NCBI RefSeq assembly: GCF_001194135.2
Contig: NC_068984.1
Coordinates: 14,976,700-15,040,699 of the forward strand
From: Octopus bimaculoides
Lineage: Eukaryota
Reading direction: 5' to 3'
DNA: 64,000 nucleotides
The notes under the pieces were generated by a model. That model was not told where the DNA came from, made no database searches, and worked only from the letters and a program-made list of their open reading frames with translations. The translations under genes were made by a program, and so were the position numbers. Shown here in pieces: positions 1,398-1,766 of this stretch. How positions within the stretch are numbered: position 1 is the stretch's first letter; each line of letters begins with the position of its first letter.

Positions 1398-1766
1398 TTA
1401 CGAACATTACTTGCTAGTTCAACTACTGCGATCATCTCTCAGAAAGATTTTAGAACTAGCTTTTTAGCTCGTTGCAAAAATCAGCGATTGGATGTCGTTT
1501 GAATTTATATATATATTGCGAGCAGAGGCAAGCTATTGCCATCTCTAGCAGACGAAGTGTCCAGTACTGAAGAGAGGCAGAAATAGCCCGAAACCAGGAC
1601 TTGTCTACTCGTCCCATCGCTAGAAGGTGGTAGGGGTTCGTTCCCTTGCTCGCAATCTATCGGATGCAGCTGTGCTAGAGGAGATTTCGTCTTGGAGTTA
1701 AAAAGTCGCAGTTAAGTCCGTTCGAACGGAACAGTCATGTTGAAGTGGTTACGAACATTACTTGCT
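1398..1766 (+). mobile_element. 351-bp retrozyme-like unit bounded by an 18-bp direct repeat and containing a hammerhead ribozyme
   Basis: ttacgaacattacttgct occurs at 1398-1415 and 1749-1766; internal HHR and long hairpin 1515-1656. Confidence 0.65.
1551..1613 (+). ncRNA. Type I hammerhead ribozyme (predicted GUC cleavage after 1605)
   Basis: Stem I agta/tact plus gacg/cgtc; core CTGAAGA 1567-1573; stem II g(a)ggc-agaaata-gccc; GAAA 1590-1593; stem III A-c...g-T in the near-palindrome ACCAGGACTTGT; GTC 1603-1605. Confidence 0.8.

What the first reader, a model, noticed from the sequence alone, without database searches (positions are those of the whole stretch)
1398..1766. Retrozyme-like 351-nt unit: hammerhead at the tip of a rod-like RNA fold, bounded by an 18-bp direct repeat
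Seen: a type I HHR (CTGAAGA, stem II, GAAA, stem III, GTC). Its stem I extends far beyond the minimum: agta/tact, gacg/cgtc, gccatctctagc pairing with gctagaaggtggt (2 G-U pairs and a bulge), and attgcgagca/tgctcgcaat. This gives a ~140-nt rod (1515-1656). The segment is non-coding and flanked by ttacgaacattacttgct repeated at 351-bp spacing. Known: metazoan retrozymes are short non-autonomous HHR retroelements of a few hundred nt that make circular RNAs and are thought to use PLE machinery. A PLE relic lies just upstream. Inference: this is a cephalopod retrozyme or circular-RNA family. The 18-mer is either a TSD or terminal redundancy from reverse transcription of a circle.
Basis: partly seen in the sequence, partly recalled or inferred. 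Interest (0 to 1): 0.88.

Follow-up and report, generated by a model that had tools for sequence, protein, structure and literature searches.

The report
Lone hammerhead retrozyme copy in octopus
This is a single, slightly over-length DNA copy of a 351-nt non-coding self-cleaving (hammerhead) RNA element in an octopus genome, sitting in a microsatellite next to a dead Penelope-like retrotransposon: a new example of a known kind of mobile element, not a new kind.

Summary
The 18-bp repeat, the complete type I hammerhead (HHR) core (cut site after C1605), the ~150-nt rod and the upstream Penelope-like element (PLE) relic are all present and exceed chance. Rfam calls no hammerhead here, but it also misses two other short-helix-III HHR motifs identified by descriptor, so that negative says little.

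New results:
- The window is Octopus DNA.
- The relic belongs to the Hydra clade of PLEs, which inserts into (TA)n.
- The unit lies in a (TG/TGTA/TA)n microsatellite and differs in composition from the relic.
- A non-orthologous O. sinensis locus holds an 80-nt fragment of the same family, flanked by (TA)n. It carries the 18-mer, preceded by the unit's 3'-end bases. The 18-mer is therefore internal, a terminal redundancy and not a TSD.
- Hydra PLEs in Octopus carry a different HHR: a helix II segment of 58-61 nt and a palindromic helix III.
- O. sinensis also has a near-identical 504-bp tandem and inverted HHR array in (TA)n.

Best reading (about 0.6): a 1.05-unit "monomer" copy of a non-LTR retrozyme, reverse-transcribed from a circular or multimeric RNA, probably by PLE machinery. 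With one ribozyme this locus cannot make a circle. Cleavage, circular RNA and copy number are untested. It is a new member of a known kind.

The parts
1398..1766 (+). The whole insertion: 1.05 copies of a 351-nt non-coding HHR-bearing unit (44% GC).
   Evidence: The circular fold of the 351-mer is -102.5 kcal/mol, z = -2.5.
1398..1415 (+). 18-nt terminal redundancy, 5' copy (TTACGAACATTACTTGCT).
   Evidence: It is internal to the element in L008. It is essentially unpaired in the circular fold.
1749..1766 (+). 18-nt terminal redundancy, 3' copy, identical to the first.
1511..1660 (+). Rod-like fold with the hammerhead at its tip; helix I is extended by three further helices.
   Evidence: z = -3.7.
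1563..1609 (+). Minimal type I hammerhead. Helix I 1563-1566/1606-1609; CUGAAGA 1567-1573; helix II 1574-1589 with bulged A1575; GAA 1590-1592; helix III 1593-1604; predicted cleavage after C1605.
   Evidence: The same bulged-A helix II occurs in two unrelated complete HHRs.
1555..1562 (+). 8-nt asymmetric bulge (AAGUGUCC) in helix I, 4 bp from the core, in the active fold. Candidate partner of loop 2 (AGAAAUA, 1579-1585). This is inference only.
   Evidence: Constrained fold.
1..1230 (+). Context: degenerate Hydra-clade PLE ORF (relic 1; YRDD at 171-182, WFHPN at about 820, assembly gap 935-1060). The sense strand is G-poor.
1231..1264 (.). Context: (TG)n/(TGTA)n microsatellite between relic 1 and the unit.
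1265..1395 (.). Context: later MITE insertion with a TA TSD; second copy at 55076-55206 (92% identical).
1767..2240 (.). Context: TA-rich flank (1767-1774), a ~410-bp TIR element (1775-2186), then (TG)n. The unit therefore lies inside a compound microsatellite.

Best explanation
Positions 1398-1766 are a single genomic cDNA copy, 1.05 unit lengths long, of a ~351-nt non-coding RNA element of the metazoan non-LTR retrozyme type, in an Octopus genome. The element carries one type I hammerhead at the tip of a stable rod.

Inferred life cycle. Tandem master copies are transcribed. The hammerhead cuts after the GUC (here C1605) to give 351-nt monomers, and these are ligated into circles. A PLE reverse transcriptase / GIY-YIG endonuclease, supplied in trans, nicks a (TA)n-type microsatellite. 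It then copies a circular or uncleaved multimeric RNA by target-primed reverse transcription.

Here synthesis ran 369 nt, that is 18 nt past one full turn. That left the 18-nt terminal redundancy. The ends of the insertion lie about 208 nt upstream and 161 nt downstream of the ribozyme cut site. The template was therefore not a linear, self-cleaved monomer.

With only one ribozyme, this locus can at most cut a read-through transcript once. It cannot release a circle, so it is a dead-end 'monomer' copy.

What is shown: the sequence anatomy, statistical support for the motif and the fold, the internal position of the 18-mer in a second copy, the microsatellite targets, and the Hydra-PLE context. 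What is inferred: cleavage, circularisation, and which enzyme did the mobilising.
For: - The HHR core is complete and unique: 1 hit in the window and 0 in 200 random windows.
- The unusual bulged-A helix II (GAGGC...GCCC) recurs in two unrelated metagenome elements. Both are complete minimal HHRs with their own helix I and a palindromic helix III, and helix II continues in the bulged register there. The same pattern gives 0 hits in 596 Gb of prokaryotic genomes and 0 in IMG/VR.
- The rod has z = -3.7 and the circular 351-mer z = -2.5.
- The 18-mer repeat is exact.
- L008 1418-1497 (O. sinensis) is 87% identical to 1399-1465. It includes the 18-mer, is preceded by TTGAAGT (which matches 1741-1747) and is flanked by (TA)n. 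A dimer query aligns it across the unit junction, and the flanks are unrelated to the window.
- The unit sits within (TG/TGTA/TA)n. Hydra PLEs insert into (TA)n (PMC8557442).
- Composition breaks at about 1230: G is 10-12% in the relic and 24-25% in the unit.
- Hydra-PLE HHRs in Octopus have a different architecture.
- Octopus has a clear retrozyme-like array, 504 bp x 2.6 plus an inverted copy, in (TA)n.
- Size, GC content and non-coding nature match published non-LTR retrozymes, and monomer copies are reported (PMC7229834; bioRxiv 10.64898/2026.07.22.740005).
- PLE RT uses multimeric RNA and initiates internally (PMC11167929).
Against: - No tandem repeat exists at this locus.
- Only one full and one 80-nt copy were seen in about 124 kb of Octopus DNA, so there is no covariation evidence for the ribozyme or the rod.
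- Rfam gives no hammerhead hit.
- Helix III is weak. The nearest-neighbour model puts the active fold 12.8 kcal/mol above the rod MFE.
- The six-frame translations of the unit match no predicted protein in the 5.8-billion-protein database. That is weak evidence against high abundance in assembled data.
- The junction evidence upstream of the 18-mer in L008 is only 7 nt plus a 3-nt gap.
- The two copies have different 3' ends, at the equivalents of 1415 and about 1467.
Confidence: 0.6

Rival explanations
1. The unit is not an independent element. It is the 3' UTR or pseudo-LTR of the upstream PLE (relic 1), or a heavily 5'-truncated copy of some autonomous HHR-bearing PLE. On this view the ribozyme is simply the PLE's own.
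For: It has the same orientation as the relic and lies about 170 bp downstream of it, or about 40 bp before the MITE inserted. PLEs carry HHRs in their pLTRs near the 3' end (PMC8557442). Retrozymes are phylogenetically close to pLTRs. Relic 1 is a separate subfamily, about 47% amino-acid identity to relic 2, and its own HHR is unknown.
Against: A microsatellite and a sharp composition break separate the relic from the unit. The exact 18/18 repeat suggests the unit is much younger than the heavily decayed relic. The Hydra-PLE HHRs seen in Octopus share a 58-61-nt helix II segment and a palindromic 8-nt helix III, unlike this one; these are window 42605-42692, L007 and L009. A 351-nt periodicity with an internal 18-mer does not fit a fragment of a multi-kb element. 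The L008 copy stands alone in (TA)n with no adjoining ORF.
Confidence: 0.17
2. It is a 333-bp SINE-like or other TPRT insertion (1416-1748) with an 18-bp target-site duplication, and the hammerhead-like motif is incidental.
For: An 18-bp direct repeat is within the TSD range for target-primed insertions. Metazoan retrozymes are said to have larger TSDs than the 4 bp of plant LTR retrozymes. The bases just inside the two repeats pair with each other.
Against: The 18-mer recurs attached to element sequence at a non-orthologous locus. There is no tRNA, 5S or 7SL head or A-tail, and Rfam finds no such hit in 1200-2000. The chance rate of the HHR motif is below 1 in 200 windows.
Confidence: 0.06
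3. It is a structured repeat whose hammerhead is dead or was never functional: a decayed ribozyme, or a look-alike with a defective helix II or III.
For: Rfam gives no hit. There is a bulge next to the core and helix III has only 2 clean pairs. The inactive fold is favoured by 12.8 kcal/mol. The relaxed descriptor does return dubious hits elsewhere, for example window 46222-46272 and L008 3803.
Against: All conserved core nucleotides are intact. The same bulged helix II occurs in independent complete HHRs. Rfam also misses two other descriptor-identified short-helix-III HHR motifs. Short helix III is normal for metazoan type I HHRs, some of which work as dimers (PMC7229834).
Confidence: 0.15

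Closest known systems
Metazoan non-LTR retrozymes (Cervera & de la Pena 2020, PMC7229834; Li, Clavereau & Pollet 2026, bioRxiv 10.64898/2026.07.22.740005)
   Same: Both have a type I hammerhead in a non-coding unit of a few hundred nt (351 here; 150-450 is typical) with low GC (44%) and a highly structured predicted RNA. Both are associated with PLEs. Monomeric genomic copies are known alongside the arrays.
   Different: This locus has 1.05 units, not a dimer or multimer. Cleavage, circular RNA and copy number are untested. Helix II carries a bulged A. No paper in the searched library mentions retrozymes or HHRs in cephalopods, apart from a PLE survey.
Hammerheads in the pseudo-LTRs of Penelope-like elements, especially the Hydra clade (Cervera & de la Pena 2014, PMC4209133; Craig et al. 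2021, PMC8557442)
   Same: It shares the type I topology. It lies next to a Hydra-clade relic in the same orientation, in a (TA)n-type target.
   Different: Octopus Hydra-PLE HHRs have a 58-61-nt helix II segment and a palindromic 8-nt helix III (window 42605-42692, L007, L009). This one has a 16-nt helix II, a non-palindromic 12-nt helix III and a long extended helix I. Outside the core there is no sequence similarity.
504-bp HHR array of O. sinensis
   Same: Both are non-coding HHR units in Octopus, inserted in (TA)n and strongly structured (z = -4.8). The copies end at two different 3' positions.
   Different: The sequence is unrelated. It forms a true tandem plus inverted array of 99-100% identical copies. 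Helix III is palindromic, and there is an extra U after the core instead of the bulged A.
Plant LTR retrozymes and retroviroid-like elements (Cervera et al. 2016, PMC4918200)
   Same: The concept is the same: a genomic DNA copy of a small self-cleaving RNA that circularises.
   Different: The plant elements have type III HHRs within ~350-bp LTRs, a PBS and PPT, 4-bp TSDs and high GC. None of these is present here.

Membership tests
Metazoan non-LTR retrozyme | Type I hammerhead with a complete catalytic core | tested here: met
   The core, G10.1-C11.1, A15.1-U16.1 and C17 are all present. Helix II has a 1-nt bulge.
Metazoan non-LTR retrozyme | Short non-coding unit (about 150-450 bp, up to about 1 kb) with low GC | tested here: met
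   The period is 351 bp, GC is 44%, the longest stop-free stretch is 68 aa, and there are no protein relatives.
Metazoan non-LTR retrozyme | Head-to-tail tandem arrangement (dimer or longer), so that two ribozymes flank a unit | tested here: not met
   Only 1.05 units and one HHR are at this locus. Monomer derivatives of retrozyme families are described.
Metazoan non-LTR retrozyme | Multi-copy dispersed family | tested here: inconclusive
   One further 80-nt copy was found in about 60 kb of other Octopus DNA. No whole-genome search was possible.
Metazoan non-LTR retrozyme | Self-cleavage and expression as circular RNA | not testable with these tools
   This needs transcription assays and RNA data.
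PLE pseudo-LTR hammerhead (Hydra clade) | Contiguous with, and repeated on both sides of, a PLE ORF of the same element | tested here: inconclusive
   The 5' side of relic 1 lies outside the window. A microsatellite and a composition break separate the ORF relic from the unit.
PLE pseudo-LTR hammerhead (Hydra clade) | Minimal HHR with a short palindromic helix III, as in the Octopus Hydra copies | tested here: not met
   Helix III, ACCAGGACUUGU, is not palindromic, and helix II is 16 nt against 58-61 nt.
Hydra-clade PLE (the upstream relic, not the unit) | RT followed by a C-terminal GIY-YIG domain with a CxCx5C linker and no CCHH; insertion in (TA)n | tested here: met
   Homologues P0001-P0003 and relic 2 show CxCx5C plus GIY-YIG. 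Relic 1 aligns to their RT/linker part. Both relics end at microsatellites.
Rfam hammerhead families | Match to an Rfam hammerhead covariance model | tested here: not met
   No hit at gathering threshold or at E<=10. Two other short-helix-III HHR motifs used as controls also fail, so the test has little power.
SINE | Small-RNA-derived head and an A-rich or simple-repeat tail, with a locus-specific TSD | tested here: not met
   There is no tRNA, 5S or 7SL hit in 1200-2000 and no tail. The 18-mer is not locus-specific.
Plant LTR retrozyme | Type III HHRs in LTRs, a PBS and PPT, and a 4-bp TSD | tested here: not met
   The HHR is type I and single, and there are no LTRs.

The most novel reading that the evidence does not exclude
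The insertion records reverse transcription of a circular hammerhead RNA that went just over one full turn. Start and stop both lie in the unpaired 18-nt terminal loop at the end of the rod opposite the ribozyme. This would point to a defined loop-primed initiation site for PLE-type RT on retrozyme circles. In addition, the bulged-A helix II (CUGAAGA-G-A-GGC...GCC-C-GAAA) would mark an undescribed hammerhead subclass. It is seen here in octopus and in two unrelated metagenome elements, both probably eukaryotic.
Probability: 0.2. Interest if true: 0.55.

Novelty: new member of a known kind. Interest (0 to 1): 0.4.

Why it matters
If confirmed, it extends non-LTR retrozymes to cephalopods. It also gives a concrete pairing to test: a (TA)n-targeting Hydra-clade PLE with small hammerhead elements found in the same kind of target. 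The terminal redundancy is a small direct clue that the template was circular or multimeric and not a cleaved monomer. Together with the young 504-bp array in O. sinensis, it suggests that octopus genomes are a usable system for studying how PLE enzymes mobilise ribozyme circles. It does not change what is known about the class.

Tried and rejected
- **Rfam hammerhead models.** Runs at gathering threshold, and at E<=10 on 801 nt and on 106 nt, gave no hit. I rejected this as evidence after two other short-helix-III HHR motifs identified by descriptor (L002 1314-1354, L004 243-284) also gave nothing.
- **Other copies in the window.** blastn with word size 7 and nhmmer with a dimer query found none.
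- **Six-frame translations of the unit.** I used them as bait for spurious ORFs in the 5.8-billion-protein collection. There were no hits at E<=10.
- **Scans with the HHR pattern.** Prokaryote genome and IMG/VR scans gave 0 hits. The metagenome scan found only unrelated HHRs, not family members.
- **Upstream DNA.** I looked for an annotated ORF near the window start that could fetch the sequence upstream of relic 1. There was no usable candidate.
- **TRF on L009.** It missed the 504-bp period because the tool's period limit is 500. The repeat finder recovered it.
- **The second HHR-like core.** The core at 46222-46272 (-) lies in a palindromic MITE and has three mismatches next to the core. 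I judged it chance.
- **Dimer pairing of helix III.** Only 4 of the 6 symmetric pairs are Watson-Crick, by my own hand count. That is not more than chance allows beyond the two pairs the motif requires, so I make no claim.
- **Covariation test of the rod.** It was impossible with one full copy.

Full report
**1. What is in the sequence**

The 18-mer TTACGAACATTACTTGCT occurs exactly twice in the window, at 1398-1415 and 1749-1766, 351 bp apart. About 5e-4 such pairs are expected by chance.

Between the two copies lies a complete type I hammerhead (HHR):
- Helix I: AGTA 1563-1566 pairs with TACT 1606-1609.
- Core: CTGAAGA 1567-1573.
- Helix II: 1574-1589, made of G-C, a bulged A1575, GGC/GCC, and the loop AGAAATA.
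- GAA 1590-1592.
- Helix III: 1593-1604, made of A-T, C-G, then irregular pairing.
- C1605 is the cleavage nucleotide.

It returns nothing in 200 first-order Markov windows.

The energy is -54.7 kcal/mol, z = -3.7, and none of 200 dinucleotide shuffles folds as well. The whole 369-nt segment has z = -2.0. The 351-nt unit folded as a circle has z = -2.5.

The segment is non-coding. The longest stop-free stretch is 68 aa. A query made of all its longer translations found no relative among 5.8 billion proteins.

**2. The Rfam negative**

Rfam 15 reports no hammerhead at gathering threshold, nor at E<=10 on 801 nt or even on 106 nt. Neither was reported. The Rfam models therefore have little power for HHRs with a short helix III, and the negative carries little weight.

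The real oddity of this HHR is the bulged A in helix II. I scanned JGI metagenome contigs for CTGAAGAGAGGC-N5-9-GCCCGAAAC and found four contigs, which represent two unrelated elements.

Both elements are complete minimal HHRs. Each has its own 4-bp Watson-Crick helix I (TCTC/GAGA and TTAG/CTAA) and a palindromic helix III (ACATGT and ACTAGT). In both, helix II continues in the bulged register. None of these features was part of the search pattern.

The same pattern, with a gap of N4-10, has 0 matches in 596 Gb of prokaryotic genomes and 0 in IMG/VR. The bulged-A helix II is therefore a recurrent natural variant and not a sign of a false motif.

**3. Organism and neighbours**

Positions 1 to about 1230 on the + strand are a badly decayed reverse-transcriptase ORF. 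It has YRDD at 171-182 and WFHPN near 820. [quoted passage not shown]

A second, better-preserved relic lies at about 40390-41560. It has the CNCRIKARC linker and the GIY-YIG domain. These features define the Hydra clade of Penelope-like elements. That clade is short, inserts into (TA)n, and carries canonical HHRs (PMC8557442).

The closest proteins to relic 2 come from Octopus bimaculoides (94% identity) and O. sinensis, so the window is Octopus DNA.

Relic 1 ends at a (TG)n/(TGTA)n microsatellite (1231-1264). After it comes a 131-bp MITE with a TA TSD (1265-1395; second copy at 55076-55206). Then follow 'TA', the unit, 'TTATATAT', a ~410-bp TIR element (1775-2186) and (TG)n. The unit therefore sits inside a compound TA/TG microsatellite.

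Base composition changes sharply at about 1230. The relic's sense strand has 10-12% G and 29% C. The unit has 24-25% G.

**4. TSD or terminal redundancy**

The Octopus proteins gave access to about 60 kb of Octopus DNA (L007-L009). L008 (O. sinensis) 1418-1497 is 87% identical to window 1399-1465, which includes the 18-mer. The fragment is flanked on both sides by long (TA)n. Nothing else within 4-5 kb resembles the window, so the two loci are not orthologous.

A locus-specific target duplication should not recur attached to element sequence at another locus. Moreover, the bases before the 18-mer in L008 are TTGAAGT, which matches the bases shortly before the 3' copy in the window (1741-1747). 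With a dimer query, nhmmer aligns the fragment across the unit junction, model positions 346-421.

The 18-mer is therefore internal to a 351-nt repeating unit, and the window holds 1.05 units. The upstream extension is short (7 nt, plus a 3-nt gap), so I rate this conclusion at about 0.8.

In the circular fold the 18-mer is an unpaired terminal loop, at the end of the molecule opposite the hammerhead.

**5. Is it the PLE's own ribozyme?**

Hydra-type copies in Octopus do carry an HHR, seen at:
- window 42605-42692, downstream of relic 2;
- L007 8909-8826 (-);
- L009 10437 (+) and L009 4230 (-).

These share one architecture: a helix II segment of 58-61 nt and an 8-nt palindromic helix III (ACGTACGT or ACAATTGT). 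In the window copy the palindrome is mutated to ACGTACAT. They align with each other.

The unit's HHR has a 16-nt helix II, a non-palindromic 12-nt helix III and a long extended helix I. It shares nothing with the Hydra type outside the core.

Four observations argue for a separate, younger, non-autonomous element: this difference in the ribozyme, the composition break, the intervening microsatellite, and the exact 18/18 repeat next to a heavily decayed ORF. Relic 1 is a distinct subfamily (about 47% identity to relic 2), and its 5' side lies outside the window. The pLTR rival therefore keeps some weight, about 0.17.

**6. Octopus does have retrozyme-like arrays**

L009 1262-3121 holds a 504-bp non-coding HHR unit. 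There are 2.6 tandem copies on the - strand plus a 1.1-copy inverted arm. The copies are 99-100% identical and are bounded by (TA)n on both sides. The circular fold has z = -4.8.

The tandem-plus-inverted structure in (TA)n is the PLE insertion signature described by Craig et al.. The two arms end 95 nt apart in unit coordinates. This recalls the two RT start sites, the 'tail', described for a PLE (PMC11167929). The two copies of the 351-nt family likewise end at different positions, at the equivalents of 1415 and about 1467.

**7. Mechanism**

Metazoan non-LTR retrozymes are transcribed from tandem copies. They are cut by type I HHRs and circularised, and they are thought to be mobilised by PLE enzymes (PMC7229834; bioRxiv 10.64898/2026.07.22.740005). 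PLE RT uses multimeric RNA and starts internally, after cleaving AT-rich DNA.

The ends of the insertion (1398 and 1766) lie far from the cut site (1605/1606), and they overlap by 18 nt. The template was therefore a circle or an uncleaved multimer, copied for 369 nt.

In the nearest-neighbour model the active HHR fold is 12.8 kcal/mol less stable than the rod. That would favour ligated, uncut circles but says nothing certain about activity.

With one ribozyme, this locus cannot release a circle. It corresponds to the 'monomer' derivatives reported for vertebrate retrozyme families. Cleavage, circularisation and the identity of the mobilising enzyme are all inferred, not shown.

**8. Verdict**

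The class and its PLE link are already published. A search of the paper library for hammerhead or retrozyme terms together with cephalopod, octopus or squid returned only a PLE survey. This is therefore a new member of a known kind.

Scores: confidence in the retrozyme-monomer reading is about 0.6, and interest is about 0.4.

Noticed in passing
window 42605-42692 (+), with relic 2 at about 40390-41560: A second hammerhead of the Hydra-PLE type lies about 1 kb downstream of a second PLE relic: GCAG CTGAGGA GTAC..GTAC GAAA CGTACAT A CTGC. It is homologous to HHRs in L007 and L009. Its helix III palindrome carries a G-to-A change.
   Followed up: partly
L009 1262-3121 (O. sinensis VCDQ01005361.1): A 504-bp non-coding HHR unit forms 2.6 tandem copies plus a 1.1-copy inverted arm. 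The copies are 99-100% identical and bounded by (TA)n, and the circular fold has z = -4.8. This is a young retrozyme-like array unrelated in sequence to the 351-nt unit. Its two arms end 95 nt apart in unit coordinates.
   Followed up: partly
L003 4439-4472 (-), L004 247-280 (+), L006 2685-2718 (-), L005 2414-2446 (-) (JGI metagenome contigs): Two unrelated complete minimal hammerheads share the bulged-A helix II (GAGGC...GCCC) with the octopus unit. The source organisms are unknown. L005 lies at the 3' end of a contig that encodes an M3-type peptidase.
   Followed up: partly
window 46222-46285 (-), inside the palindrome 46230-46340: A hammerhead-like core (CTGACGA ... GAAA ... helix I GGGGT/ACCCC) sits inside a palindromic MITE-like element. 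Helix II has three mismatches next to the core, so it is probably a chance look-alike.
   Followed up: partly
window 46423-46693 (+): A metazoan SRP RNA match (92.6 bits, above gathering) lacks the 5' Alu-domain hairpins and lies between microsatellites. It could be a gene, a pseudogene or a SINE head; this is undecided.
   Followed up: no
window 1-1230 and 41561-42170: The sense strand of PLE relic 1 is strongly G-depleted (G 10-12%, C 29%). The 3' region of relic 2 has only 7% G. The cause is not examined; it could be the element's native composition or strand-biased mutation.
   Followed up: no
window 1265-1395 and 55076-55206: A 131-bp MITE with ~34-nt terminal inverted repeats and a TA duplication is present in two copies, 92% identical. 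It scores as various miRNA precursors in Rfam, below their thresholds.
   Followed up: partly
window 3031-3105 (+): A borderline tRNA match (29.3 bits against a gathering score of 29). It may be a tRNA-derived SINE head.
   Followed up: no
window 3374-4125: A long tandem coding-like repeat (WSGIHIPNNKYPPYT motif, open on both strands) is interrupted by an assembly gap. It looks like a minisatellite and not a gene.
   Followed up: no
method note (L002 1280-1400, L004 200-320): The Rfam 15 hammerhead models do not report short-helix-III HHR motifs, even at E<=10 on 121-nt inputs. Scans that rely on Rfam will therefore under-call this class.
   Followed up: yes
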